From Mobula birostris (taxonomy: Eukaryota), in contig NC_092389.1 of NCBI RefSeq assembly GCF_030028105.1, positions 14,185,180 to 14,249,179 of the forward strand: 64,000 nucleotides of DNA, read 5' to 3'. Under the pieces are notes generated by a model, which was given only the letters and a program-made list of their open reading frames with translations, did no database searches and was not told the DNA's origin. The number at the start of each line of letters is the position of its first letter. The first letter of the stretch is position 1. Positions 9,895-61,463 of the stretch are shown one piece after another. The position numbers and the translations under genes are program-made.

Positions 9895-10833
9895 GTGAGT
9901 CTAAGGGGTTTAACACAGAGTCACGGGCAGGTTTAAAACATTTGAAAAAACCACCTGAAACCCTGTCAGTTTCAGGGGGCTCCCAGTCAGTCAATGACAG
10001 CGAAAGATATTTCATTTGGAACTTATTTTGTGAGGTAGATTTCGTAGGGCGTGGGGGAGTTATTCTTAACATTTCTGGATTCTGTCGCGTCGTCTTTCTA
10101 CACGTTTGGAAGTATTAAAAGTAGAGGGTTCCCTTAAACTCTGTCCCAGTAGCAAATAGAAATTTGGAATCGAACTGTATTTGAATATCGAGTTGAATGT
10201 TGGACATATTGAAATCTCGATCGCACAACGTCCGCCTGATGAACCTGTCTGTAGCATTCCAGAGGGAGAAGTCGGCTACAGGTTGGAGCCGGCGGAAACA
10301 GCAGGGTGGATTTTGAATGCCGGTCGGCCATGATGTGAGTTCATGGCAGAACAGGTTCTGAGATGAATGGCCTTATCAATTTCTCCTGTGCTTGGCTTCT
10401 GGTAAATTACGCCTGTATGTGAGAAATTTGGGGCAAAAGATGAGATAAGTCCCCGATAGCTTGAAAGCGCGTACCACCAGTAACAAGAATACTCCGGTAT
10501 TATAAGATTCTTGAACGAACTCCCTTACGCTAAAGATTCTAGATCGCTCAATCGATTTCGTTGTAACCCTTGTACTTTATTCTTTACCTGCGTTGCTCTT
10601 TATCTGTATATTCTATATATTTTTATTTTTATTACCTTGATGTATTTATGTATGGTATGCAAACAAAATCCATAAGACATGGGAATGGAGTTGAAGCATC
10701 GAGTCATCTGTGACATTCAATCAAGGCTGATTTATTTTCCCTCTCATCCCCATTCCCCTGCCTTCTCCCAGTAACCTTTGCCACCCAAGAACCTATAAAC
10801 CTCTGCTTTAGATATATTTTAATATATTAGATA

Positions 10834-11358
10834 CAGTACTCTGTGAAAGTCTTGGGCATATATATAGCTAAGACTTGCACAGAAATGTAGTAATTTTATG
10901 TAGTTAATTTATGTAGTGAATTTTATGTATTGCACTGTACTGCTGCAAAAGAAGCAAATTTCATGATATGTGAGTGATGATAAACCTGATTCTGATATGG
11001 GTCTCTGTTGTGGACTGAGAGTGGGAAGGGAGCAGGGAGAGGGGAATCATGGTTGGGAAAAGGGGGATGGGGAAAGGGAAGCACCAGAGAGACATTCTGT
11101 AATGATCAATAAACCAATTGTTTGGAATCAAATGATCTTGCCTGGTGTCTCAGGGCTGGGTGTGTCTGCACCCACAGCACCAGCATTCCCCTGGCACTCC
11201 TCTGCTACCTGTCCCACACCCCTCCTGGTGTTCCACCCTCACCATTCCCAATATCCTTTGCTCCTGTCAGATTTACAACCTCACTCTCTGCTCCATGTTG
11301 ACAAAAGTCTTAGGTACCCTAGCTATAGAAATGTGTCTAAGACATTTGCACAGTACTG
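10834..11358. mobile_element. Tc1/mariner-type MITE carrying a captured LINE 3' end
   Basis: TA|cagtactctgtgaaagtcttgggca ... tgtctaagacatttgcacagtactg|TA imperfect TIRs with TA TSD. The interior contains the LINE tail tattgcactgtactgctgc...aaacctgattctga. Confidence 0.75.
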
Positions 11359-12967
11359 TATATTAAAAATATTTATACTGTGATATTAAATCAGGAACTG
11401 GTTGGGTTATTGTGTCAGGTCATTGTTGAAGGACAGTGTCACTGTGCTGATACAATGCGTGTTTGAAGCTTGCTGTGTGGGACCGAGCTGTACACGGCCA
11501 AGTGAGTGGAAATGCTGTGAGCTGCCCTGTGGAGGGGTGAGTGTGATGAATGGGAACACTGGCTGAAGGGCAAAGCCACAGCTCTGGCTGGAAACTGAGG
11601 TTGTGATCCCAGCCTGTGGTACCATTGAAAAGCCAGAAAATGCTGGAAAGGTCTTAAGTTCTGGTGGTCTTCAGACCTGAAACATTGACTCTGTTCTTTC
11701 TTCCACTGATGCTGCCCAATCTGTTGAATATTTCTAGTATTTCCTGTTTTCATTTCAGACTTCCAACATCTGTATGTTTTGAAGTCTTTGGTTGACCCAA
11801 CAAGACATCAGACCAGCTTCTGGTCAGTTCTTTGCTTAGGGAGAGGTTGGATAGATTCCAGATAAAGCTGGGACATGCTGTGATTCCAGCAGTAGAACCG
11901 TCCAAGAGCAGATTGGCCAGGCTCAAGGAGATGCATGGGCTGGTCCTGTCCCTGTTTAAGTACTTCTGAAAGACCTGTTTATAAAGTGCTTTGACCATAA
12001 GACATAACAGTAGAATTAGGCCCTTCAGCCCATCAAGTCTGTTCTGCCATTCCATCATGGCCGATTTATTTTCCCTCTCAATCCATTCTCCTGCCTTCTC
12101 CCCGTAACCTTTGACTCCCTGACTAATCAAGAACCTATCAAACTCCGCTTTAAGTATACCCAATGATTTGGCCTCCACAGCTGCCTGTGGCAATTAATTC
12201 CACATCCTCTGGCTAAAGAAATTCCTCCTCGGCCCTGTTCTAAAGGGACACTCTTCTGTTCTGAGACTGTGCCCTCTGGTCGTAGACTCCCACACTAAAG
12301 GAAGCATCCTCTCTACATCCACTTTATCTAGGCCTTTCAATATTTGGTAAATTCCACCCCCCCCCCCCCCACATCATTATTCTGAACTCCATTAAGTACA
12401 GGCCCAGGGCCACCATTTTGATGTGATCAAGATGCTAAAAAATGTTGAACAAATACACTTCTCACTTTTCTTTTTACTCAGTCCTAGAAGCCCTTCTCAC
12501 TATCTCCTGTTGAACAGTTCCAATACATGGAAATCTTTCCTACTCGTACAAACATTCAATGTTTGTTAAACTAATATTAAACCTCCATATGGTCAGGTTC
12601 ATTCTTGAGCTCGGGGATCAAGTTTTGGTTGCTGAAATTTATCTCACTTTAGTCCATATATCCATCTACCTCAGCTTTTATCGAATCTACCTCCGCAGCT
12701 TTCGGTGGCAGGTGAGGCAAGAGGTAGAGAATTCCAGAGATGGTTTTCCTCCTTCTCCTCCAGTCCTAAGCAGGTGGTCCCTTATGTTGAAACTACACTC
12801 ATAGATCGAAGCTTCCCACCGCTACCCTAAAAGGAGAAAACAAACCTACAGCAGTTGCTCTTTCAGTTCCCCCTTTGAAATTTGTATGTTTTCAAGATGT
12901 TACTCATAATTTTTTTTATAAGGAAGAGGTTAGGCTAATTCATAGGACAGCTTCCTCGTTCCAGGAA

Positions 12968-14280
12968 TAGACAATAGGTGCAGGAGTAGGCCATTCGGCC
13001 CTTCGAGCCAGCACCGCCATTCACTGTGATCATGGATGATCATCCACTATCAGTATCCAGTTCCTGCCCTATCCCCATAACCTTGGATTCTGCTATCTTT
13101 AAGAGCTCTATCCATCTCTTTTTTGAAAACATCCAGAGACCTGGCCTCCACAGCCTTCTGGGACAGAGCATTCCATATATCCACCACTCTCTGGGTGAAA
13201 AAGTTTTTCCTCAACTCCGTTCTAAATGGCCTACCCCTAATTCTTAAACTGTGGCCTCTGGTTCTGGACTCACCCATCAGCGGGAACATGCTTCCTGCCT
13301 CCGGCGTGTCCAATCCCTTAATAATCTTATATGTTTCAATAAGATCCCCTCTCAGCCTTCTAAATTCCAGAGTATACAAGCCCAGTCGCTCCAATCTTTC
13401 GACATATAACAGTCCCGCCATCCCGGGAATTAACCTTGTGAACCTACGCTGCACTCCCTCAATAGCAAAAATATCCTTCCTCAAATTTGGAGACCAAAAC
13501 TGCACACAGTACTCCAGGTGTGGTCTCACCAGGGCCCTGTACAACTGCAGAAGGACCTCTTTGCTCTTATACTCAATTCCCCTTGTTATGAAGGCCAGCA
13601 TGCCATTAGCTTTTTTCACTGCCTGCTGTACTTGCATGCTTGCTTTCAGTGACTGATGTACAAGAACACCTAGATCTCGTTGTGCTTCCCCTTTTCCTAA
13701 CTTGACTCCATTTAGATAATAATCTGCCTTCCTGTTCTTACCACCAAAGTGGATAACCTCACATTTATCCACATTAAACTGCATCTGCCGTGCATCTGCT
13801 CACTCACCTAGCCTGTCCAAGTCACCCTGCATTCTCATAACATCCTCCTCACATTTCACACTGCCACCCAGCTTTGTGTCATTGGCAAATTTGCTAATGT
13901 TACTTTTAATTCCCTCATCTAAATCATTAATATATATTGCAAACAGCTGCGGTCCCAGCACTGAACCCTGCGGTACCCGACTGGTCACCGCCTGCCATTC
14001 CGAAAGGGACCTGTTAATCGCTACTCTTTGTTTTCTGTCAGCCAGCCAATTTTCAATCCATGTCAGTACTCTGCCCCCAATACCATGTGCCCTAATTTTG
14101 CCCACTAATCTCCTATGTGGGACTTTATCAAAGGCTTTCTGAAAGCCCAGGTACACTACATCCACTGGCTCTCCCTCGTCCATTTTCATAGTTACATCCT
14201 CAAAAAATTCCAGAAGATTAGTCAAGCACGATTTCCCCTTCATAAATCCATGCTGATTCCGACCAATCCTGTTACTGCTA
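12968..14280 (-). mobile_element. CR1 LINE 3' portion (RT C-terminal half)
   Basis: ORFs 13800-14243 (KSCLTNLLEFF, FQKAFDKVPH, VPQGSVLGP) and 13050-13784 (LVRPHLEYCVQFWSP). Confidence 0.92.
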
Positions 14281-40789: not shown

Positions 40790-43550
40790 AAAGCATCAAC
40801 CCTTCCACACAAAAAATAAAACGAATAGTGCAAATGGCAACAAGGACATCAATCCCACCACATGGGGAAAAAATAAATTGCGCAAAGAGCAACAAGAACA
40901 TCAAAAACCATATAAACCCCACTGCGCTCAAAAAAAATTGCGCAAACGGCAACAAGAGCATCAAACCCCAACCCCCCCCCCGAGCAAAAAGCTAATCACA
41001 CAGACAGCAACAAGAGCATCAAACCCCATACCCCCCCTCGTACAAAAAGCAAATCTCGCAAATGGGAACAAGACCTTCAAACCCCACCCCGCGCAAAAAA
41101 ACTAATCACGCAAACGGCAACAACCATCAAATTCCAAACACCCCCACACAAAATACAAGTTGCGCAAACGGCAACAAGAGCATCAAGCTCTCAAACCCCC
41201 TGCGCAAAAAGCTATCATGCAAACAGCAAAACGACCTTCAACCCCCCCCCACGCAAAAAACAAGCAAATGGCAACAAGAGCTTCAACCCCCCCGCACAAA
41301 AAACAAATCGTGCAAACTGCAACAACACCTTCAAACACCCCCTGCACAATAAACTAATCACGCAAACGGCAACAAGACCTTTAAACCCCCTCTCGCGCTA
41401 AAAGCAAATCTCGCAAATGGCAACAAGAACTTTAAACCCCCTCTCGCGCTAAAAGCAAATCTCGCAAATGGCAACAAGAACTTTAAACCCCCTCTCGCGC
41501 TAAAAGCAAATCTCGCAAATGGCAACAAGAACTTTAAACCCCCTCTCGCGCTAAAAGCAAATCTCGCAAATGGCAACAAGACCTTTAAACCCCCTCTCGC
41601 GCTAAAAGCAAATCTCGCAAATGGCAACAAGAACTTTAAACCCCCTCTCGCGCTAAAAGCAAATCTCGCAAATGGCAACAAGAACTTTAAACCCCCTCTC
41701 GCGCTAAAAGCAAATCTCGCAAATGGCAACAAGAACTTTAAACCCCCTCTCGCGCTAAAAGCAAATCTCGCAAATGGCAACAAGACCTTTAAACCCCCTC
41801 TCGCGCTAAAAGCAAATCTCGCAAATGGCAACAAGAACTTTAAACCCCCTCTCGCGCTAAAAGCAAATCTCGCAAATGGCAACAAGAACTTTAAACCCCC
41901 TCTCGCGCTAAAAGCAAATCTCGCAAATGGCAACAAGAACTTTAAACCCCCTCTCGCGCTAAAAGCAAATCTCGCAAATGGCAACAAGAACTTTAAACCC
42001 CCTCTCGCGCTAAAAGCAAATCTCGCAAATGGCAACAAGAACTTTAAACCCCCTCTCGCGCTAAAAGCAAATCTCGCAAATGGCAACAAGACCTTTAAAC
42101 CCCCTCTCGCGCTAAAAGCAAATCTCGCAAATGGCAACAAGACCTTTAAACCCCCTCTCGCGCTAAAAGCAAATCTCGCAAATGGCAACAAGAACTTTAA
42201 ACCCCCTCTCGCGCTAAAAGCAAATCTCGCAAATGGCAACAAGAACTTTAAACCCCCTCTCGCGCTAAAAGCAAATCTCGCAAATGGCAACAAGAACTTT
42301 AAACCCCCTCTCGCGCTAAAAGCAAATCTCGCAAATGGCAACAAGAACTTTAAACCCCCTCTCGCGCTAAAAGCAAATCTCGCAAATGGCAACAAGAACT
42401 TCACACCCCCCACACAAACGGCAACAAGACCTTCAAACCCCCCTGCACAAAAAACTAATCACGCAAACGGCAACAAGAGCATCAAACCTCAACCCCCCCA
42501 CACAAAACACTATCACGTAAATGGCAACAAGACCTTCAAAACCCCCGCGCAAAAAACATGCAAACAGCAACAAGAACTTCAAACCCGCCCCCCCCGGCGC
42601 AAAAAACAATCATGCAAACAGCAACAACACTTTCAAACTCTCCCGCACAAAAAGCAAATCTCGCAAATGGCAACAGTCCCCCTCGCGCAAAAAAACTATT
42701 CACACAAATGGCAACAAGAGCAACAAATTCCAAACCCCCGCCCACAAAAAAAAGTTGCGCAAACTGCAACAAGAGCATCAAACCCCAAACCCCTGCACGC
42801 AAAAAGCTATCATGCAAACGGCAACAAGAACTTCAACCCCCCCCGCGCAAAAAACTAATCACACAAACGGCAACAAGAGCATCAAACCTCAAATCCCACC
42901 TCATGCAAAAAGCAAATCTCGCAAATGGCAACAAGGCCTTCAAACCCCCCCCCGCACAAAAAACTAATCACACAAACGGCAACAAGACCTTCAAACTCCA
43001 CCCCCCACGCAAAAAGCAAAGCAGAGAAACGGCAACAAGAGCATCAAATCCCAAACCTTCCCTCGCAAAAAAATCACGAAATCAGCAACAAGTCCTTCAA
43101 ACCCCAGACATCCCCCCCCCGTGCGTAAAATTCAATTTGCACAAACAGCTTTAAGAGAATCAAACCCCAACCCCCCCCCGCACAAACGGCAACAAGAGCA
43201 GCAACCCTCAAACTCCCTCTTGCGCGGAAAACAAATCGTGCAAATTCCAACAAGGCCTTCAAACCCCCAAACCCCACCCCTCTGAGCAAATGGCAACAAG
43301 AGCATCAAACACCAAACCCCCCGGCACAAAAAAAACAATTTGCACAAACGGCAACAAGAACACCAAACACCAAGCCTCCCTCTTCGTGCACAAAAAAAAT
43401 CGTACAAATCTCACAAACAGCAACAAGAACATCAAGCCCCCCATGTGCAAAATAACAAATCATGCAAACAGCAAAAAGAACATCAAAACCCAAACTCCAA
43501 ATCCCACCTCCCGCGCAAAAAAACAAACAAATCGCGCAAACAACAACAAT
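40790..43550. repeat. A/C-rich minisatellite with conserved core GCAAA(C/T)GGCAACAAGA.C.TCAAACCCC and degenerate flanks
   Basis: The core recurs every ~45-60 nt, and one more unit resumes at 44770-44838 after a nested insertion. Confidence 0.95.
41361..42380. repeat. Homogeneous core of 20 x 51-bp units
   Basis: Unit cgcaaatggcaacaaga(a/c)ctttaaaccccctctcgcgctaaaagcaaatct. The C variant occurs in units 1, 5, 9, 15 and 16. Confidence 0.98.
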
Positions 43551-48479: not shown

Positions 48480-48857
48480 AGACAGCAGTACCCTACAGAG
48501 AACTCTCTACGGGCAAGAAAGATCGTGGTGCCCCGCGCAAGAGATACAAAGACCAACTTAAGCAGCAGCTCTCTCACACAAATATCAAGGTCAATGAGTG
48601 GCAGCAGCTAGCTTGTGGCGGAGGGTAGGCATGGAGAAGCCAAGAACTTTGAGGAATTCAGAAGAGCGACTGCTGAAGAGAAGAGGAGACGCAGGAAGGA
48701 TCCTAGTACCATGCACCTGCATCCCGGCTGCTCTCATGTCTCTACTGTTCCAGAGTCTGCAGATCCAGAATTGGCCTCTACAGTCACCAACAATCGTGCC
48801 TTCGCTCCTGAGGACTCTTCTTCCCTCCTGATCTTCACAAGTGAAGAACCAGCCATC
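48480..48857 (+). mobile_element. RTE-clade LINE 3' fragment inserted into a V-SINE
   Basis: Encodes ELSTGKKDRGAPRKRYKDQLK (RTE C-terminus). TSD aatcagg at 48473-48479 and 48858-48864. Confidence 0.75.
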
Positions 48858-51137
48858 AATCAGGGGACAATTTACAATGACTAACTAGCCTACCAATCAG
48901 TTCCTCTTTGGACTGTGGAAGGAAACCGGAGCACCCAGAGGGAGCACACGCGGTCACGGGGAGAACGTACAAACTCCTTACAGACAGCGGCGGGAATCGA
49001 ACCTGAGTCACTGGTACTGTTAAACATTGTGCTAACCCACTACACTACCGTCCCACCCATAAACGTAGAAGCATTGAAACAAGAGCACAGGTAGGCCTTT
49101 TGCCCTTCATGCTTCACTGTCATTTAATACAATCACAACTGATCCTTTATCCTACCTTTGGTGCCTTTTATGTCTAGAATTCTAACCACCTTCTTAAATA
49201 TAGAAAGATAAGACCATAAGACATAGGAGCAGAATTAGGCCATTTGGCCTATCATGTCTGCTCCATCATTCAATCATGGCTGATCCTTTTTTTCCCTTCC
49301 TCAGCCCCACTCTCTGGCCTTCTCCCCATAAACTTTAATGCTATGTCCAATCGAGAGCCTATCAAGCTCTACCTTAAATACACTCAACAACCTGGCCTCC
49401 ACAGCTGACTGTGGTAATAATTTCCACAAATTCACCACCCTCTGGCTAAAGAAGTTTCTGTTTTAAATGGATGCCCCTCTATCCTGAGGCTGTGCCCTCT
49501 TGTCCTAGACTCTCCCACTATGGGAAACATCCTTTCCACATCTACTCTGCCTAGGCCTTTCAACATCTGAAATGTTTCAATGAGATCCCCCCTCATCCTT
49601 CTGAATTCCAGCGAGTACGGACCCAGAGCTATCAAACATTCCTCATATGATAACCCTTTCATTCCCGGAATCATCCTTGTGAACCTCCTCTCCAATGCCA
49701 GCACGTCTTTTCTTAGATGAGGAGCCCAAAACTGTTCACAATACTCAAGGTGAGGCCTCACCAGTGCTTTATAAAGCCTCAGCATCATATCCCTGCTCTT
49801 GTATTCTTGACCTCTTGAATTGCATGCTAATATGGTATTTGCCTTCCTCACCACTAACTCCACCCGCAAGTTAACCTTTAGGGTGCTCTGCACAAGGACT
49901 CCCAAGTCCCTTTGCATCTCAGATTTTTGGATTTTCTCCCCATTTAGAAAGTAGTCTGCATATTTATTTCTACTACCAAAGTGCATGACCATGCATTTTC
50001 CAACATTATATTTCATTTCCCACTTTCTTGCCCATTCTCCTAATCTATCTAAGTCCTCCTGCATCCTACCTATTTCCTCAACACTACCTGCCCCTCCACC
50101 AATCTTCGTATCATCTGCAAACTTGGCAACAAAGCCATCTATTCCAACATCTAAATCATTTATATACAGCATAAAAAGAAGTGGTCCCAACACCGACTGC
50201 TGTGGAACAACACTAGTCACTGGCAGCAAACCAGACAAGGATCCTTTTATTCCCACTCGCTGCCACCTACCAATCAGCCAATGCTCTAACCATGTTAGTA
50301 ACATTCCTGTAATACCATGGGCTCATAACTTGGTAAGCAGCCACATGTGTGGCACCTTGTCAAAGGCCTTCTGAAAGTCCAAATATACAACATCCACTGC
50401 ATCCCATTTATCTATCCTATATGTAATCCCCTCAAAGAATTCCAATAGGTTTGTCAGGCAAGATTTTTCCTTAAGGGCACCATGCTGACTTTGACCTATC
50501 TTGTCCTGTGACACCAAGAAACCATAACGTCATCCTTAACAATTGACTCCAACATCTTCCCAACCACTGAGGTCAGTCTAACTGGTCTCTAATTGCTTTT
50601 CTGCTGCCTTCCTCCTTTCTTAAAGACTGGAGTGACATTTGCAATTTTCCAGTCCTCTAGCACCATGCCAGAGCCCAATAATTTTTGGGAGATCATTACT
50701 AATGCCTCCATAATCTCTACCACTACCTCTTTCAGTTCATTTGGTCTGGGTGACTTATGTACCCTTAGGTCTTTCAGCTTTTCTCCCTTGTAATAGTAAC
50801 TGCACTCACTTCTTTTCCCTCACACCCTTCAACATCTGGCACACTGCTAGTGTCTTCCGTGGTGAAGACTGACGCAAAACACTCATTTGGTTCATCTGCC
50901 ATCTCCTTGGCCCCCATTATTATTTCTCCAGCCTCACTTTCTAGCGGTCCTATATCCACTCTCATCTTTCTTTTATTTTTTACATATTTGAAAAAGCTTT
51001 TAGTATCCACTTTGATACTGTTTGCTAGCTTGCTTTCATATTTCATCTTTTCCCTCCTAATGATTTTTGTAGTTGCTGTCTCTAGGGTTTTAAAACCTTC
51101 CCAATCCTCTGTCTTCCCACTAATTTTTACTTTGTTG

Positions 51138-51694
51138 GGTGTATGGGGTGTCTGGGAGGGGTAGCACCTCTGGTGGGGGAATATGTTGCGTCCTTTTCAA
51201 AGCAGTTAGTCCACCTTTGGTCCCCACCTGGCACTCAGCTCTCACCTGTGGCTCCCCGTAGCTGTTTGCATGCGACAGCGGCCACACCCCAGGCAACGGC
51301 TTCGACAAGCCGGCTAAACCAGGTGAGGGTAGCCGACGAGTCTCAAACCCTCAGTGAGATAGGGAGTTGTCTATCCCAGCATGTGAAGGTAGACTCTGGT
51401 GGATTGAGCGGACGAGACCAATGGAAGGTCCAACGGTCAACAAGGCGGTCTCTGCAAGCGTCGTGGAACGTGTAGAGCAGGACAAGACACAGAAGACGTC
51501 CTGGTCATCCACTGCGCCTAGTCCCATCTCCAGCCGCCTCGACTCTGTCTTGACACTGGATCCAGATGGGAATTGGGAAGAGAGAGTGAGGCTGACGCTG
51601 CACAACTCTCCCTCACTTAAATCCAAATCACGTGCTTGCCTCGACACTATCATAATGGTGTCGAGGTCCTCATCGACATCGACGATGGACGAAC
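51138..51694 (+). mobile_element. 557-bp non-autonomous retroposon with a 5' HDV-like ribozyme fold and 3' stem-loops
   Basis: 9-bp TSD actttgttg (51129-51137 and 51695-51703) inside a CR1. No tRNA A/B boxes and no recognisable protein. 3' hairpin cctcgacacta/tggtgtcgagg at 51639-51666. Confidence 0.85.
51145..51327 (+). ncRNA. Candidate HDV-like (nested double-pseudoknot) self-cleaving ribozyme
   Basis: P1 ggggtgt 51145-51151 / acacccc 51284-51290. P2 ctcacctgt 51241-51249 / accaggtgag 51318-51327 (one bulge). P3 ggc 51250-51252 / gcc 51281-51283. L3 begins UCC. J1.1/4 aggcaa (HDV has GGGCAA). P4 cggctt-cgac-aagccg. J4/2 gCtaa with the candidate catalytic C at 51314. Confidence 0.7.
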
Positions 51695-52696
51695 ACTTTG
51701 TTGTATGCCCTATCTTTTGCTTTTATATTAGCTTTGACTTCCCTTGTCAGCCCCAGTATTGCTATCTGATTATTTCTTTGTTTTTGGAATACATCTATCC
51801 TGCACCTTCCTCATTTTCCCAAGAAGTTCATGCCATTGCTGCTCTGCTGTCATCCCTGCCAGCAGCTCCTTCCAATTTACTTTGGCCAACTCCCCTTTCA
51901 TACCACTGTAATTTCCTTTACTGAAATAACGCTACATCAGACTTTACTTTCTCCCTATCAAATTTGAGGTTGAACACAATCATATTGTAATCACTGGTTC
52001 CTATGGGTTCTTTTACCTTAAGCTTCCTAATCATCTCTGGTTCATTACATAACACCTAATCCAGTATAGCTGATCCCCTAGTAGGCTCAATGACAAACTG
52101 CTCTAAAAAGCCATCACGTAGGCATTCAACAAACTCACTCTCTTGAGATCCATTTCCAACGTAATTTTCCCAATTGACCTGCATGTTGAAATCTCCCATG
52201 ACTACCATAACATCGCCCTTTTGACATTTCTATTTCCTGTTGTAATCTGTGGACCACATCCCAGCTACTGTTGGGAGGCCTGTATATAACTGCTATCAGG
52301 ATCCTTTTACCCTTGCAGTTTCTTTACTCAACCCACAAGGATTCAGCGTCTTCTGATTTTATGTCACATCGTTCCACTGACTTAATGCCATTCTTTACCA
52401 GCAGAGCCATGTCACCATCTCTGCCTACCTTCCTAACCCTCCGATATATTTCATGTGTTGGCCCCTATTTCTTCTAAGGTGCAGAATTCTGCCAAATATA
52501 TGAAGAATTGTGTTCTTCATCTCCGTCCTAAATGTCTACAGGAGGACTAGAATTAAAAGCAAGGCTGAACTGCTGAGGCTTCATAAGGCATTGGACAGAC
52601 TGCATTTGGAATATTCCGAACAATTTTGGGCTCCCTATCTAAAGAAGGATGTACTGGCTGTGGAGAGGGTCCAGAGAAGGTTCATAAAATGATCCC

Positions 52697-55248: not shown

Positions 55249-58200
55249 ATAGTCATAGTCATAGTCATAGTCATAGTCATACTTTATTGATCCCGGGGGA
55301 AATTGGTTTTCGTTACAGTTGCACCATAAATAATAAATAGTAATAGAACCATAAATAGTTAAATAGTAATATGTAAATTATGCCAGTAAATTATGAAATA
55401 AGTTCAGGACCAGCCTATCGGCTCAGGGTGTCTGACCCTCCAAGGGAGGAGTTGTAAAGTTTGATGGCCACAGGCAGGAATGACTTCCTATGACGCTCTG
55501 TGTTGCATCTTGGTGGAATGAGTCTCTGGCTGAATGTACTCCTGTGCCCACCCAGTACATTATGTAGTGGATGGGAGACATTGTCCAAGATGGCATGCAA
55601 CTTGGACAGCATCCTCTTTTCAGACACCACCGTCAGAGAGTCCAGTTCCATCCCCACGACATCACTGGCCTTACGAATGAAATTGTTGATTCTGTTGGTG
55701 TCTGCTACCCTCAGCCTGCTGCCCCAGCACACAACAGCAAACATGATAGCACTGGCCACCACAGACTCGTAGAACACCCTCAGCATCGTCCGGCAGATGT
55801 TAAAGGATCTCAGTCTCCTCAGGAAACAGAGACGGCTCTGACCCTCTTGTAGACAGCCTCAGTGTTCTTAGACCAGTCCAGTTTATTGTCAATTTGTATC
55901 CCCAGGTATTTGTAATCCTCCACCATGTCCACGCTGATCCCCTGGATGGAAACAGGGGTCACCGGTACCTTAGCTTTCCTCAGGTCTACCACCAGCTCCT
56001 TAGTCTTTTTCACATTAAGCTGCAGATAATTCTGCTCACACCATGTGACAAAGTTTCCTACCGTAGCCCTGTACTCAGCCTCATCTCCCTTGCTGATGCA
56101 TCCAACTATGGCAGAGTCATCAGAAAACTTCTGAAGATGACAAGACTCTGTGCAGTAGTTGAAGTCCGAGGTGTAAATGGTGAAGAGAGAGGGAGACAAG
56201 ACAGTCCCCTGTGGAGCCCCAGTGCTGCTGATCACTCTGTCGGACACACAGTGTTGCAAGCACACGTACTGTGGTCTGCCAATCAGGTAGTCAAGAATCC
56301 ATGGCACCAGGGAAGCATCCACCTGCATCGCTGTCAGCTTCTCCCGCAGCAGAGCAGGGTGGATGGTGTTGAACGCACTGGAGAAGTCAAAAAACATGAC
56401 CCTCACAGTGCTCGCTCGCTTGTCCAGGTGGGCGTAGACACGGTTCAGCAGGTAGACGATGGCATCCTCAACTCCTAGTCGGGGCTGGTAGGTGAACTGG
56501 AGGGGATCTAAGTGTGGCCTGACCATAGGCCGGAACAGCTCCAGAACAAGTCTCTCCAGGGTCTTCATGATGTGGGAGGTCAATGCCACCGGTCTGTAGT
56601 CATTGAGGCTGCTGGGACGTGGCGTCTTCGGCACAGGGACGAGGCAGGACGTCTTCCACAGCACAGGAACCCTCCGGAGCCTCAGGCTCAGGTTGAATAC
56701 ATGGCGAAGTACTCCACATAGCTGAGGGGCACAGGCTTTGTGCACCCTGGTACTGACACCATCTGGTCCTGCAGCCTTGCTTGGGTTGAGACGTTTCAGC
56801 TGTCTTCTCACCTGTTCAGCTGTGAAGCCCACCGTGGTGGTTTCGTGTGGGGGAGGGGTATAATCATGAGAGCAGGGTGGGGGACTGTGAGGAGAGGTAG
56901 GAGGGGAGAGTGGAATATGTGTTGGTTGGGGGCTGACAACAGATGGCTCATGTGGGGGATGGGCAGCAGGGGTCACAATGTCAAATCTGTTAAAGAACAA
57001 GTTAAGTTCGTTGGCCCTGTCCACACTGCCTTCAGCTCCTCTGTTGCTAGTTTGCCAAAACCCAGTGATGGTCCTCATCCCCCTCCAGACCTCTCTCATG
57101 TTGTTCTGCTGGAGTTTCCACTCAAGCTTCCTCCTGTACCTGTCTTTAGCCTCCCTGATCCTGGCTTTCAGGTCCCTCTGTATTGCACTCAGCTCCTCCC
57201 TATTTCCATCTCTAAACGCCCTCTTTTTAGCATTCAGGATGTCCTTAATGTCCTTTGTCACCCATGGCTTTTTATTTGAATAACAAAGGACAGTTCTTGT
57301 CGGAACATTGCAGTCCACACAGAAGTTGATGTAATCAGTGATGCACTCTGTGAGCCCATCAATATCCTCTCCATGTGGCTCACAGAGTGCCTGCCAGTCT
57401 GTCACCTCAAAACAACCCTGGAGGGCCTCATAAGGCCCCTCCGACCATTTCCTCACTGTCCTCGAGGTTGCAGGTTTACTCTTCACTAGAGGCACGTAGC
57501 AGGTTTTAGATGCACCAGGTTGTGATCTGACCTTCCCAGTGGGGGGAGGGGAGAGGAGCTGTATGCATCCTTAACGTTAGCATACATCAAATCCAGAGTC
57601 CTCTCCCCTCTGGTTGTACAGCTCACATACTGCGTGAAGTTTAGCAGTGTTCTAGCCATGGTAACCTGGTTGAAGTCACCCGAGATGGTAATGAGGGCAC
57701 TCGGGTGCTGGGTTTGTAATCTGGCTATGATGGTGTAAATGATGTTACACGCCGACGTCGGGTTGGCAGAGGGAGGGATGTACACAACAACCACAATTGC
57801 ATGTGAGATTTCCCTTGGCAAATAATATGGCCGGAGTCCAACAGCAAAAAGTTCAATATCTGGGCTACAGACACGTTCCTTGATCGTAATATGACCAGGA
57901 TTGCACCATCTGTTATTTACCAGAACCGCAAGCCCCCCTCCTTTACGCTTACCGCTCTCAGTGCAATTCCGGTCAGCCTGAACGGTCTGGAAGCCCTCTA
58001 TGGAAACGTTTCGATCAGGTATGTCCTCGTGCAGCCATGTCTCAGTGAAGCACATGACACTGCTCTCCCGAACTGTTCTCTGACTCCTGACAAGCGCAGT
58101 CAGTTCGTCCATTTTATTCCCCAGCGATCTCACATTTCCCATGATGAGAGAGGGGAGACACGGCTTATAACTTCTCTTCTCCATAAGCCTCTGTTGTCTC

Positions 58201-59663: not shown

Positions 59664-60274
59664 CTGGTCTAAGAACACTGAGGCTGTCTACAAGAAGGGT
59701 CAGAGCCATCTCTATTTCCTGAGGAGACTGAGGTCCTTTAACATCTGCTGGACGATGCTGAGGATGTTCTATGAGTCTGTGGTGGCCAATGCTATCATGT
59801 TTGCTGTTGTGTGCTGGGGCAGCAAGCTGAGGGTAGCAGACACCAATAGAATCAACAAACTCATTCGTAATGCCAGTGATGTTGTGGGGCTGGAACTGGA
59901 CTCTCTGACGGTGGTGTCTGAAAAGAGGATGCTGTCTATGTTGCATGCCAACTTGGACAATGTCTCCCATCCACTACATAATGTACTGGGTGGACACAGG
60001 AGTACATTCAGCCAGAGACTCATTCCACCGAGATGCAGCACTGAGAGTCATAGGAAGTCATTCCTGCCTGTGGCCATCAAACCTTACAACTCCTCCCTTG
60101 GAGGGTCAGACACCCTGAGCTGATAGGCTGGTCCTGGACTTATTTCATAATTTACTGGCATAATTTACATATTACTATTTAACTATTTATGGTTTTATGA
60201 CTAATTATTTATGGTGCAACTGTAACGAAAACCAATTTCCCCTGGGATCAATAAAGTATGACTATGACTATGAC
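59664..60274 (+). mobile_element. 5'-truncated copy of the same Rex1/Babar-like family
   Basis: The peptide at 59755-60123 is almost identical to that at 55415-55786, and the copy ends aataaagtatgactatgactatgac. Confidence 0.9.
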
Positions 60275-60561: not shown

Positions 60562-61463
60562 TGTCATGGTCTGGTCTGTGAAGTCTGTATTCCGGTTCAC
60601 GGTCCGGTCCATCGACCCTTGCTCCAGGTTTTCCTGTTTACCCTGTTTCTGTCTTGTTGAGCTCTAATTGAGGCAGCTGATGCTAGTTGGGGCTGGCTGC
60701 ATAAATACCTCCAGAGACCAGGGCATGGTTGCTGGATTGTTCTTGTCCTTATTCTCTGTATCTCTTCCCCTGCCTTCTGTTTCCTCGCCTGAAGCCCTGC
60801 CTTGTCTTGCCGGTAACTCTCGCCTCGCCTAAAGTTCTCGTCTCGCCATGCTTTGCCAGAAGCCTTGCGTTGTCTTGCTGGTAACTCTCGCCTCGTCTTG
60901 CCTGCAGTCTTGTCCTGGAGCCACCCTGTACCTAGCTCCCTTCCTGTCCCTTGATTCCGCCCAGGTAAGCCAGGCCGTCTTGCCGCTACCTGTGGTTGGT
61001 TCTGTCCCCTCCTGTCCCTTGCCTCTGTCGGGTGGTGATCCATGCCCTGCCCAGGAGGAGCCTGCCTAGCCTCAAGCCTGAAGACGCCAGCCTCCTGCCT
61101 AGCCTCAAGCCGGAAGACTCCAGCCTCCTGCCTAGCCTCAAGCCGGAAGACTCCAGCCTCCTGCCTAGCCTCAAGCCGGAAGACTCCAGCCTCCTGCCTA
61201 GCCTCAAGCCGGAAGACTCCAGCCTCCTTGCCTAGTTCTGGGGTCCGAGCCAGAGGCAAGACCCAGGTGCTAGGTGCTGGGTCCTAGTCCAGTCTCTGGC
61301 TTGGAGTCCAAGCCCGGCCCATAGCTCTTTTGTCCAGTCCTGTTCCAGGTTCCTGGTTTTCCTGTCCATGTCCTTGCCCTCACCCTGTATCCTAGTCCTG
61401 TCCCTAGTACTTCAGTGTCTGTGTCTTGCACTTGGGTCTGTTCCCAGCCACCGCCCAATGACA
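60562..61463 (+). mobile_element. Solo LTR (Gypsy- or BEL-type), 902 bp
   Basis: Termini TGTCAT...ATGACA, 5-bp TSD gcctg (60557-60561 and 61464-61468), and TATA-like cataaata near 60700. Confidence 0.85.
61061..61225. repeat. 5 x 33-bp tandem repeat within the solo LTR
   Basis: Unit cctgcctagcctcaagccggaagactccagcct; four copies are identical and the first has two differences. Confidence 0.95.

What the first reader, a model, noticed from the sequence alone, without database searches (positions are those of the whole stretch)
51138..51694. Non-coding retroposon headed by an HDV-like ribozyme with an atypical hairpin inserted in L3
Seen in sequence: a 557-bp insert with a 9-bp TSD whose first ~190 nt contain every HDV element in the correct order. 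P1 (GGGGUGU/ACACCCC) starts 7 nt inside the element's 5' boundary. J1/2 is 89 nt and itself structured (ggtgggg 51172-51178 with ccccacc 51222-51228). P2, P3 (GGC/GCC), L3 starting UCC, (A)GGCAA, a perfect 6-bp P4 and G-C-UAA follow before P2'. Established: HDV-like ribozymes process the 5' ends of R2, RTE and L1Tc/ingi retrotransposons, and large insertions are tolerated in J1/2 and P4. Unusual: L3 is 28 nt instead of about 7-8 and carries its own stem-loop (GCUGUU...GACAGC, 51261-51279). I do not recall this variant being described, and standard descriptors would miss it. A51291 replaces the P1.1 G, consistent with CpG decay (CG>CA) in this copy. With no Pol III boxes and two 3' hairpins, the element looks like a ribozyme-defined, promoter-less SINE-like unit released from host transcripts and mobilised in trans (inference).
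Basis: partly seen in the sequence, partly recalled or inferred. Interest (0 to 1): 0.85.

Follow-up and report, generated by a model that had tools for sequence, protein, structure and literature searches.

The report
Ribozyme-headed deletion copy of a LINE
This 557-base insert is a decayed copy of a very abundant stripped-down jumping gene whose front end folds like the self-cutting hepatitis-delta RNA with an extra hairpin; the arrangement is known, the hairpin is unusual, and cutting is untested.

Summary
Insert-free copies of the host repeat confirm the boundaries.

It is not a free-standing SINE. It consists of about 520 nt of the 5' UTR plus the 35-nt 3' end of a single-ORF LINE (endonuclease and reverse transcriptase), seen complete on public contig L002. 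That makes it a SIDE-like internal-deletion derivative.

P2 through P2' is conserved in three relatives that are 70-77% identical. Compensatory changes occur in P1, P2 and P4.

Copy 5' ends in three genomes cluster at 51137.

A51291 is private decay: 78-92% of family depth reads G.

The hairpin follows an otherwise canonical 8-nt L3. It is kept in all four sequences, including the LINE with an intact ORF.

Against: Rfam finds nothing significant, only four nucleotide sequences were available, and no cleavage or RNA 5'-end data exist.

This scan has already reported the same family on other DNA of this genome. Verdict: a new variant of a known kind, and this copy is dead.

The parts
51129..51137 (+). 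5' copy of the 9-bp target-site duplication (ACTTTGTTG). G51137 could equally be the element's first base.
   Evidence: In one search, insert-free copies of the host repeat align up to 51137 and continue with the sequence found after 51703.
51138..51694 (+). Non-coding, internally deleted LINE derivative (SIDE-like). This copy is decayed.
   Evidence: It is 70-77% identical over about 490-515 nt to the 5' ends of L001-L003. Its 3' end matches the L002 3' UTR. It has no RT or endonuclease coding.
51136..51142 (+). Outermost 5' unit, the family's P1 5' strand. Here it is TGGGTGT, pairing 6 of 7 with 51284-51290.
   Evidence: The outermost units of L001, L002 and L003 each pair 7 of 7 with their own P1', with two compensatory changes. 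Loose ends lie before 51137 in 132-146 contigs per run.
51145..51151 (+). It pairs 7 of 7 in this copy and may be an alternative or back-up P1 strand.
   Evidence: In relatives it shows no compensatory change, and 3 cells are unpaired in L002.
51152..51240 (+). J1/2 domain, which folds on its own.
   Evidence: The RNAalifold consensus hairpin domain has 3 pairs changed on both sides. A subfamily with a different sequence before 51212 is seen in 209-249 contigs per DNA run.
51241..51248 (+). P2 5' strand (CUCACCUG).
   Evidence: It pairs with 51320-51327 in 96.9% of cells, with C-G changed to A-U in L003.
51250..51252 (+). P3 5' strand (GGC).
   Evidence: It pairs with 51281-51283 and is invariant in 4 of 4 sequences.
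51253..51260 (+). Canonical part of L3 (UCCCCGUA): U51253, C51254 and C51255 for P1.1, and G51258.
   Evidence: U, CC and G are invariant in 4 of 4 sequences. The roles of the L3 U and G are taken from passages of PMC3774820 and PMC6326823.
51261..51279 (+). Extra hairpin between L3 and the 3' strand of P3 (6-bp stem, 7-nt loop).
   Evidence: 100% of cells are paired in 4 sequences, with two one-sided changes. L002 keeps a 6-bp stem despite two deletions. The frequent family variant 51279 C>U keeps a G-U pair.
51281..51283 (+). P3 3' strand (GCC).
51284..51290 (+). P1 3' strand (ACACCCC).
51291..51292 (+). P1.1 3' side. It is A-G here and G-G in the family.
   Evidence: A51291>G in 88%, 92%, 84% and 78% of depth in X1, X6, X5 and X15.
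51297..51312 (+). P4 hairpin (CGGCUU / AAGCCG, loop CGAC).
   Evidence: the second pair is G-C in the window and L002, U-G in L001 and C/A in L003. A ray subfamily has C-G at that pair (loose end behind 51289).
51313..51317 (+). J4/2 GCUAA, with the candidate catalytic C at 51314.
   Evidence: GGCUAAAC is invariant in 4 of 4 sequences. It is the best-matching part of the weak Rfam HDV-F-prausnitzii alignment.
51320..51327 (+). P2 3' strand (CAGGUGAG).
51328..51656 (+). Remainder of the LINE 5' UTR-derived body.
   Evidence: It aligns to L002 up to about 599.
51640..51665 (+). First 3' hairpin.
51660..51694 (+). 3' module homologous to the LINE's 3' UTR. It holds a terminal hairpin and ends GGACGAAC.
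   Evidence: Alignment to L002 4136-4168 scores 31, against a shuffle mean of 14.4 and maximum of 26; 0 of 500 shuffles reach it. Loose ends lie behind 51695/51696 in 107-181 contigs per DNA run.
51695..51703 (+). 3' copy of the target-site duplication.

Best explanation
Window 51138-51694 is an old, inactive copy of a very abundant non-autonomous retroelement.

**Origin.** The family arose by internal deletion of a roughly 4.1-kb single-ORF LINE (endonuclease plus reverse transcriptase, RTE-like in architecture). It keeps only about 520 nt of the LINE's 5' UTR and the 35-nt 3' UTR.

**The fold.** The first ~190 nt of both the LINE and the short element fold as an HDV-like nested double pseudoknot. 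Three features depart from the textbook form:
- a long structured J1/2
- an extra hairpin between a canonical 8-nt L3 and the 3' strand of P3
- one to three tandem ~9-nt units at the very 5' end, each able to serve as the P1 5' strand

**Inferred mechanism.**
1. The element has no Pol III promoter motif (B box or tRNA-like head) that I could detect; Pol II or other internal promoters were not scanned for. It is read through from upstream transcription.
2. The ribozyme cuts 5' of the first G of the outermost P1 unit and so defines the RNA's 5' end.
3. The LINE's protein recognises the shared 3' hairpin and GGACGAAC end.
4. The protein copies the RNA into an AT-rich target by target-primed reverse transcription, leaving a short duplication.

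**What is shown and what is not.**
- Shown: the anatomy, the homology to the LINE at both ends, conservation and covariation of the helices, and clustering of copy ends.
- Inferred: self-cleavage, read-through transcription and trans-mobilisation.

**Why this copy cannot work as drawn.** P1.1 has A51291, the outer P1 has lost its first G, and at least 11 listed positions differ from about 99% of family depth.
For: **Deletion-derivative anatomy**
- L002 carries the same head at 78-276.
- It has an 843-nt 5' UTR and a 1070-aa ORF with Exo_endo_phos and RVT_1 domains.
- Its 33-nt 3' UTR ends GGACGAAC.
- The window element aligns to its 5' UTR (76.6% over 499 nt) and to its 3' UTR (0 of 500 shuffles score as high).
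- The window holds no close relative of that ORF.

**The short form is itself amplified**
- Diverged contigs bridge the junction region: records 8, 16 and 24, each with 16-25 differences.
- 10,511-13,418 contigs per DNA run were laid on the stretch, in three organisms.

**The fold**
- 89.7% of 155 cells pair across 39 pairs, against 30-52% when partners are slid by 1-3 columns.
- Four pairs have changes on both sides; 12 of 500 shuffles reach that.
- The changes are: P1 G-C to U-A (L002), P1 G-C to A-U (L001), P2 C-G to A-U (L003), and P4 G-C to U-G (L001).
- A ray subfamily carries C-G at that P4 pair, and a U opposite G1.
- RNAalifold, which had no knowledge of the HDV model, predicts P2, P3, the extra hairpin and P4.
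- The descriptor finds 1 locus in the window and none in 100 of 100 shuffles.
- U, CC and G of L3 and GGCUAAAC are invariant in 4 of 4 sequences.
- L002 has an uninterrupted ORF and keeps every element, including the hairpin.

**5' ends**
- In 4 of 4 sequences the unrelated, 60-90% AT flank stops at the outermost unit.
- Loose ends lie before 51137 in 144, 132 and 146 contigs.

**Precedent**
- HDV-like ribozymes at the 5' ends of R2, R4/Dong, L1Tc and RTE, and SIDEs (passages of PMC3774820; abstract of PMC3414825).
Against: - Rfam gives nothing at gathering score in the window.
- Under permissive settings there is only a 14.6-bit partial HDV-F-prausnitzii match, E = 7.6 against a gathering score of 44.
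- Under the same settings there is no HDV-family match in L001-L003.
- None of the 3 relatives passes my strict descriptor. L001 has a P2 mismatch, L002 a one-base bulge in P2', and L003 a C/A in P4 and an A in P1.1.
- Only four nucleotide sequences were available, so the covariation statistics are thin. The tool warns that related sequences can beat shuffles without any structure.
- The MFE z-score is 0.12.
- I found no HDV-like ribozyme with a hairpin at this place in the papers I could search, so its compatibility with catalysis is unknown.
- The base opposite G1 is C in most copies, not the usual U.
- All runs were contigs, so no RNA 5' end could be seen. Run X15 is only guessed to be RNA.
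- The autonomous LINE was seen only on a contig of unknown organism, not in this genome.
- Loose ends at 51145/51146 could be hidden among the 1435 rows not shown.
Confidence: 0.7

Rival explanations
1. P1 is the inner unit 51145-51151, cleavage is 5' of G51145, and the 7-8 nt upstream are carried along or added at integration.
For: - In this copy the inner unit pairs 7 of 7 and the outer only 6 of 7.
- My descriptor picks the inner unit.
- Translated relatives include copies that start with a single unit: P0001, P0002 and P0005 of 12. Inner-site ends therefore exist in some lineages.
Against: - The inner unit has no compensatory change. In L002 it has 3 unpaired cells, while the outer unit covaries twice.
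- With the inner register, pairs changed on both sides fall from 4 to 2, and 82 of 500 shuffles reach that number.
- Copy ends cluster at 51137 in three genomes.
- An RNA cut at 51145 could not pass on the outer unit.
Confidence: 0.12
2. The conserved pseudoknotted 5' UTR is a real RNA or DNA element but not a ribozyme. It could be a binding site for the LINE protein, a translation-initiation structure or an internal promoter. The HDV likeness is partial, and the hairpin insertion is incompatible with catalysis.
For: - Rfam models do not recognise it.
- L3 is 28 nt with an insertion I found no precedent for.
- Review passages say HDV-like folds in R2 also bind the R2 protein and may act like an IRES (PMC6765202).
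- The L1Tc 5' end is both promoter and ribozyme (PMC3383444, search listing only).
Against: - The residues that matter only for catalysis are the most conserved: the L3 U, CC and G, the GG of P1.1 in the family majority, and GGCUAA.
- P1 starts exactly at the element's first base in 4 of 4 sequences, as expected if cleavage defines the end.
- The roles are not exclusive.
Confidence: 0.2
3. The HDV resemblance in an ordinary repeat is due to chance.
For: The single-sequence fold energy is unremarkable, and Rfam gives E = 7.6.
Against: - None of 100 shuffles gives a descriptor hit.
- The core is conserved at 70-77% overall identity, with compensatory changes.
- The fold sits at the 5' end of an intact LINE.
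Confidence: 0.03

Closest known systems
R2 SIDEs (Short Internally Deleted Elements) of Drosophila (Eickbush & Eickbush 2012, PMC3414825; abstract read)
   Same: - A non-autonomous element made of the parent LINE's 5' HDV-like ribozyme joined to its 3' end.
- It is propagated by the parent's machinery.
- Its 5' junctions are variable.
   Different: - The parent here is a dispersed endonuclease-type single-ORF LINE, not the rDNA-specific R2.
- The family is enormously abundant (more than 10,000 contigs per run), whereas SIDEs are described as rare.
- About 520 nt of the 5' UTR are kept, not just the ribozyme.
HDV-like ribozymes at the 5' ends of RTE, Baggins, R4/Dong and L1Tc LINEs (passages of PMC3774820 and PMC6765202; the primary report, Ruminski et al. 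2011, is not held and is recalled)
   Same: - The ribozyme fold begins at the element's first base.
- The element has no Pol III promoter motif (B box or tRNA-like head) that I could detect; other promoter types were not scanned for.
- The proposed role is release from read-through transcripts.
   Different: - There is an extra hairpin between L3 and P3'.
- The 5' end carries tandem alternative P1 strands.
- The host is vertebrate (a ray, per earlier notes of this scan).
- RTE clade membership of the parent was not tested by phylogeny.
NARTc / L1Tc pair of Trypanosoma cruzi (PMC3383444, PMC4035085; search listings only)
   Same: An autonomous LINE and its non-autonomous partner share a 5' HDV-like ribozyme.
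   Different: - That ribozyme is a minimal 77-nt element that is also a promoter.
- Here the fold is about 190 nt, and promoter activity is unknown.
Canonical HDV and CPEB3 ribozymes (descriptor in PMC6326823, passages)
   Same: - G1 pairs with a pyrimidine.
- P1.1 is CC/GG.
- The L3 U and G are present.
- A catalytic C sits in J4/2.
- The topology is the same nested double pseudoknot.
   Different: - L3 is 28 nt rather than 7-8.
- J1/2 is about 90-98 nt.
- J4/2 is C-U-A-A, as in the Rfam F. prausnitzii consensus.
- The base after the conserved L3 position is A, not C, in L001, L002, L003 and about 19% of family depth.

Membership tests
HDV-like self-cleaving ribozyme | Nested double pseudoknot in the order P1, J1/2, P2, P3, L3, P3', P1', P1.1, P4, J4/2, P2' | tested here: met
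   The coordinates were read. Cells pair at 89.7% across 4 sequences. The descriptor hit is unique in the window and absent from 100 of 100 shuffles.
HDV-like self-cleaving ribozyme | P1 opens with G1 paired to a pyrimidine, with the cleavage site at the 5' end of the unit it releases | tested here: met
   The outermost units of L001-L003 start with G and pair 7 of 7. In the window the inner unit has G51145-C51290, and the outer unit has lost its first G. Copy ends cluster at 51137. Cleavage itself was not tested.
HDV-like self-cleaving ribozyme | P1.1: two C-G pairs between L3 and J1/4 (this copy) | tested here: not met
   A51291 leaves one pair. L003 has the same defect.
HDV-like self-cleaving ribozyme | P1.1: two C-G pairs (family majority) | tested here: met
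   G at 51291 in 78-92% of depth in 4 runs. G in L001 and L002.
HDV-like self-cleaving ribozyme | Conserved U and G in L3 (the reverse wobble pair) | tested here: met
   U51253 and G51258 are invariant in 4 of 4 sequences. Their role is taken from PMC3774820 and PMC6326823 passages. The pairing itself is not testable here.
HDV-like self-cleaving ribozyme | Short L3 (about 7-8 nt) closed directly by P3 | tested here: not met
   L3 is 28 nt. A 19-nt hairpin plus one base lies between the canonical 8 nt and P3'.
HDV-like self-cleaving ribozyme | Catalytic C in J4/2 followed by N-A-A | tested here: met
   C51314 lies in GGCUAAAC, which is invariant in 4 of 4 sequences.
HDV-like self-cleaving ribozyme | Match to a curated covariance model at its gathering score | tested here: not met
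   0 matches at gathering score. The best match is 14.6 bits against 44. None in L001-L003.
HDV-like self-cleaving ribozyme | Site-specific Mg2+-dependent self-cleavage | not testable with these tools
   All runs were held as contigs, so no RNA ends could be seen.
SIDE-like internally deleted non-autonomous LINE derivative | 5' end homologous to the parent LINE's 5' end, including the ribozyme | tested here: met
   76.6%, 74.2% and 70.5% identity over 488-516 nt to L002, L003 and L001. L002 continues into a 1070-aa ORF.
SIDE-like internally deleted non-autonomous LINE derivative | 3' end homologous to the parent's 3' UTR | tested here: met
   51660-51694 aligns to L002 4136-4168 with score 31; 0 of 500 shuffles reach it. 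Both end GGACGAAC.
SIDE-like internally deleted non-autonomous LINE derivative | No coding capacity of its own | tested here: met
   Only short ORFs without RT or endonuclease similarity. tblastn of the L002 ORF finds nothing in the element.
SIDE-like internally deleted non-autonomous LINE derivative | An autonomous partner with both ends in the same genome | not tested
RTE-clade LINE (the parent) | Single ORF with N-terminal endonuclease and RT, very short 3' UTR, simple-repeat tail | tested here: met
   The tail letters after the 3' end are A/C-rich in other copies.
RTE-clade LINE (the parent) | RT phylogeny places it inside the RTE clade | not tested
   No reference sequences were at hand. 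Source names gave no clade. The RTE label comes from earlier notes of this scan.
Pol III SINE | tRNA, 5S or 7SL-derived head with internal A and B boxes | tested here: not met
   No B-box-like match with 1 mismatch or fewer inside the element. No tRNA-like gene. The motif was recalled from memory.

The most novel reading that the evidence does not exclude
The family's master copies carry an active HDV-like ribozyme of an undescribed architecture, with two new features.

- **Extra hairpin.** A conserved helix (a 'P3.1') is inserted between a canonical L3 and the 3' strand of P3. It is invisible to Rfam and to standard descriptors.
- **Tandem P1 strands.** One to three tandem ~9-nt units at the 5' end are each a usable P1 strand. 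The ribozyme can therefore cut at alternative sites, and an inner unit serves as a spare when reverse transcription erodes the 5' end. The window copy shows exactly this state: outer unit eroded, inner unit perfect.

The LINE's ORF has 1734 relatives at E <= 1e-20, including a frog entry. The variant could therefore be widespread in vertebrates.
Probability: 0.4. Interest if true: 0.6.

Novelty: new variant of a known kind. Interest (0 to 1): 0.45.

Why it matters
Ribozyme-headed LINEs and their deletion derivatives are established, so the principle is not new.

Three things would matter to ribozyme and transposon specialists if cleavage is confirmed:
- The HDV fold tolerates a whole helix next to its catalytic loop. 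That widens the search descriptors and explains why covariance models miss this family.
- A vertebrate genome holds tens of thousands of copies of such a unit, a rich natural mutational data set for the fold.
- Repeated P1 strands may buffer the element against 5' erosion.

For genome annotation, the practical result is that this repeat should be labelled a LINE-derived non-autonomous element, not a SINE.

Tried and rejected
**More copies.**
- The window has no second copy.
- A spurious 110-aa ORF across the ribozyme (51143-51472) found 12 translated copies.
- I aligned 11 of the 12 with the window ORF, leaving out P0004, and scanned three collections:
  - metagenome contigs: 3 loci confirmed from 120 pattern matches
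  - viral contigs: 0 confirmed from 9
  - prokaryote genomes: 0 confirmed from 18
- A DNA pattern of invariant columns found nothing in viral contigs.
- In prokaryote genomes it found 9 bacterial places. Two of them share 22 and 34 nt with the element; the other seven gave no alignment at E <= 0.01. I set all nine aside as chance.

**Alternative fold.** I considered the conserved hairpin as P3, with its 7-nt loop as L3 and a G-C/G-C P1.1. I rejected it for two reasons:
- L001 and L003 change the J1/4 partner to U-A without any change in the loop (read).
- The fold would need 12- and 4-nt linkers that the HDV topology does not have.

Not supported.

**Single-sequence thermodynamics.** Uninformative.

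**Clade of the parent LINE.**
- The names attached to 120 listed relatives gave only 'reverse transcriptase', 'hypothetical protein' and 'exonuclease III'.
- No phylogeny was made.

**Organism of L001-L003.** Unknown. The window's SINE core is absent from them: 0 hits against 14 in the window.

**Deleting J1/2 and the hairpin in silico.** Re-scanning the shortened sequence with Rfam would have been informative. It needs a joined sequence, so I left it out.

**Literature for an L3 or P3 hairpin variant, or for rays and sharks.**
- Searches found none.
- Webb et al. 2009 and Ruminski et al. 2011 are not held.

**Runs.** 4 of the 24 listed runs were laid.
Full report
**What is in the sequence.**
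- Window 51138-51694 is a 557-bp insert flanked by ACTTTGTTG on both sides.
- It lies inside another, LINE-like repeat on the minus strand.
- Public runs of three coded organisms hold copies of that host repeat without the insert. Joints run from 51126-51128 to 51696-51699, and contigs aligned up to 51137 continue with the sequence that follows the 3' duplication. The insertion and its boundaries are therefore real.
- A relaxed HDV descriptor that I wrote allows J1/2 up to 130 nt, L3 up to 40 nt and one purine at P1.1. It finds this locus alone in the 64 kb on both strands, and nothing in 100 of 100 dinucleotide shuffles.

**Relatives.**
- The window has no second copy.
- A spurious 110-aa ORF running through the ribozyme found 12 translated copies among 17 candidates.
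- Their core, from P2 to P2', is nearly invariant at the peptide level.
These are 70.5%, 76.6% and 74.2% identical over 488-516 nt. Their organisms are unknown.

**The parent.**
- L002 is a complete LINE. It has the same head at its 5' end, an 843-nt 5' UTR, and an uninterrupted 1070-aa ORF with endonuclease and reverse-transcriptase domains.
- Its 33-nt 3' UTR ends GGACGAAC.
- L001 and L003 also run on into LINE body sequence that the window element lacks.
- The window element follows the LINE's 5' UTR to about 51656. Its last 35 nt then align to the LINE's 3' UTR and end in the same GGACGAAC (score 31; shuffle mean 14.4, maximum 26; 0 of 500 shuffles as high).
- The element is therefore an internal-deletion derivative, as R2 SIDEs are (PMC3414825, abstract). 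It is not a SINE: it has no B-box-like motif and no tRNA-like head.
- The short form is itself a family. Diverged contigs bridge the junction region (records 8, 16 and 24), and 10,511-13,418 contigs per DNA run lie on the stretch.

**The fold and its register.**
- I counted pairs on a four-sequence alignment with the outermost 5' unit as P1. Of 155 cells, 89.7% pair, against 30.5-51.7% when partners are slid by 1-3 columns.
- Four pairs change on both sides; 12 of 500 shuffles reach that number. They are:
  - P1 G-C to U-A in L002
  - P1 G-C to A-U in L001
  - P2 C-G to A-U in L003
  - P4 G-C to U-G in L001
- Taken unit by unit, the outermost unit pairs 7 of 7 in L001, L002 and L003 and 6 of 7 in the window. 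The window's inner unit pairs 7 of 7.
- In all four sequences the unrelated, 60-90% AT flank stops at the outermost unit.
- In the three DNA runs, 144, 132 and 146 contigs have loose ends just before 51137.
- The 5' end carries two units in the window, L001 and L002 and three in L003. Among the 12 translated copies:
  - 3 start with one unit
  - 5 start with two
  - 4 are uninformative

A51291 is read as G in 88%, 92%, 84% and 78% of depth in X1, X6, X5 and X15. Nine of 12 translated copies have Arg where the window has Gln.

**Other family variants.**
- A subfamily in X5 (86 contigs) has U opposite G1, GG, and a P4 whose second pair is C-G where the window has G-C. That is a further compensatory state.
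- The frequent variants inside stems keep pairing: 51279 C>U and 51308 A>G both give G-U pairs.

**The hairpin.**
- L3 begins with eight bases that match the canonical loop: U, CC, two variable bases, G, and two more. U51253, C51254-C51255 and G51258 are invariant in 4 of 4 sequences.
- Passages of PMC3774820 and PMC6326823 name this U and G as the conserved reverse-wobble pair.
- The 19-nt hairpin 51261-51279 follows, then one base, then the 3' strand of P3. The extra helix therefore lies at the L3/P3' junction, not in the middle of the catalytic loop.
- It pairs in 100% of cells. L002 keeps six pairs despite two deletions.
- L002 has an uninterrupted ORF and keeps the hairpin, so the hairpin is not a feature of decay.

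**Evidence against.**
- Rfam finds nothing at gathering score.
- Under permissive settings there is a 14.6-bit partial match to the F. prausnitzii HDV model at E = 7.6.
- Under the same settings there is nothing for HDV families in L001-L003.
- None of the 3 relatives passes my strict descriptor, each through one or two defects.
- The fold energy of the single sequence is ordinary: z = 0.12.
- Four sequences are few, and the tool warns that related sequences can beat shuffles without any structure.
- All runs were held as contigs, so no RNA 5' end, strand or level could be read.
- Catalysis is untested.

**How it most likely works.**
1. Master copies are transcribed by read-through (inferred).
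2. The ribozyme cuts before the first G and defines the 5' end (inferred from anatomy, covariation and the position of copy ends).
3. The LINE's protein recognises the shared 3' hairpin and terminal GGACGAAC (inferred from the shared ends; the hairpins fold with z = -3.94).
4. Target-primed reverse transcription into AT-rich DNA leaves a short duplication (the duplication is shown).

This particular copy is dead. It has A51291, a truncated outer P1, and at least 11 listed positions where about 99% of family depth reads another letter.

**Comparison with what is known, and novelty.**
- HDV-like ribozymes at the 5' ends of R2, R4/Dong, L1Tc, RTE and Baggins elements are in print, and so are SIDEs.
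- My five literature searches found no HDV-like ribozyme with a helix at this place, and none in rays or sharks.
- Earlier notes of this scan already report the same family, the hairpin and the outward shift of the cut site on other DNA of this genome. I re-derived these points from my own calls. I did not test the RTE clade label those notes use.
- Verdict: a new variant of a known kind, well supported as a conserved fold, unproven as a catalyst.

Noticed in passing
window 40850-43400: A long tandem array of 51-bp C/A-rich units, at least 21 near-identical copies with degenerate copies on both sides (families D1-D7).
   Followed up: no
window 61028-61261: A 33-bp tandem repeat, about 6 units at 97% identity (D9).
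   Followed up: no
window 4615, 5679, 7746, 9145, 11699, 14892, 21496, 40371, 62965, 63389: A SINE-like repeat with a conserved ~60-nt core (D8). Its 21-nt core occurs 14 times in the window with 4 or fewer substitutions, and never in L001-L003.
   Followed up: partly
window 55332-55845 and 59696-60209: A 514-nt inverted repeat, 95% complementary, with arms 3.85 kb apart (I1). It may be a DNA transposon or foldback element.
   Followed up: no
window 50774-51046 and 51770-51901, minus strand: The host of the insertion is itself a LINE-like repeat with ORF remnants on the minus strand. Its insert-free copies elsewhere in the genome appear in the runs.
   Followed up: partly
window 48494-48787: A weak match (34% over 107 aa) to the C-terminal, zinc-finger-bearing end of the L002 LINE ORF. 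It is probably a fragment of a different, related LINE.
   Followed up: no
L002 923-4135: This LINE's ORF has 1734 relatives at E <= 1e-20 among 8000 scored. Many sit on ~4-kb contigs from many samples, and one is a UniRef entry from the frog Leptobrachium leishanense. The family is widely distributed.
   Followed up: no
window 51136-51154; L001 178-193; L002 78-93; L003 1264-1290: The element's 5' end holds 1-3 tandem ~9-nt G-rich units, each a potential P1 strand. The number differs between copies.
   Followed up: partly
window 51212 (family level): In 209-249 contigs per DNA run the sequence before 51212 is replaced by a different, fairly uniform sequence (agreement 0.7). This is a subfamily with another J1/2 5' half but the same core.
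   Followed up: no
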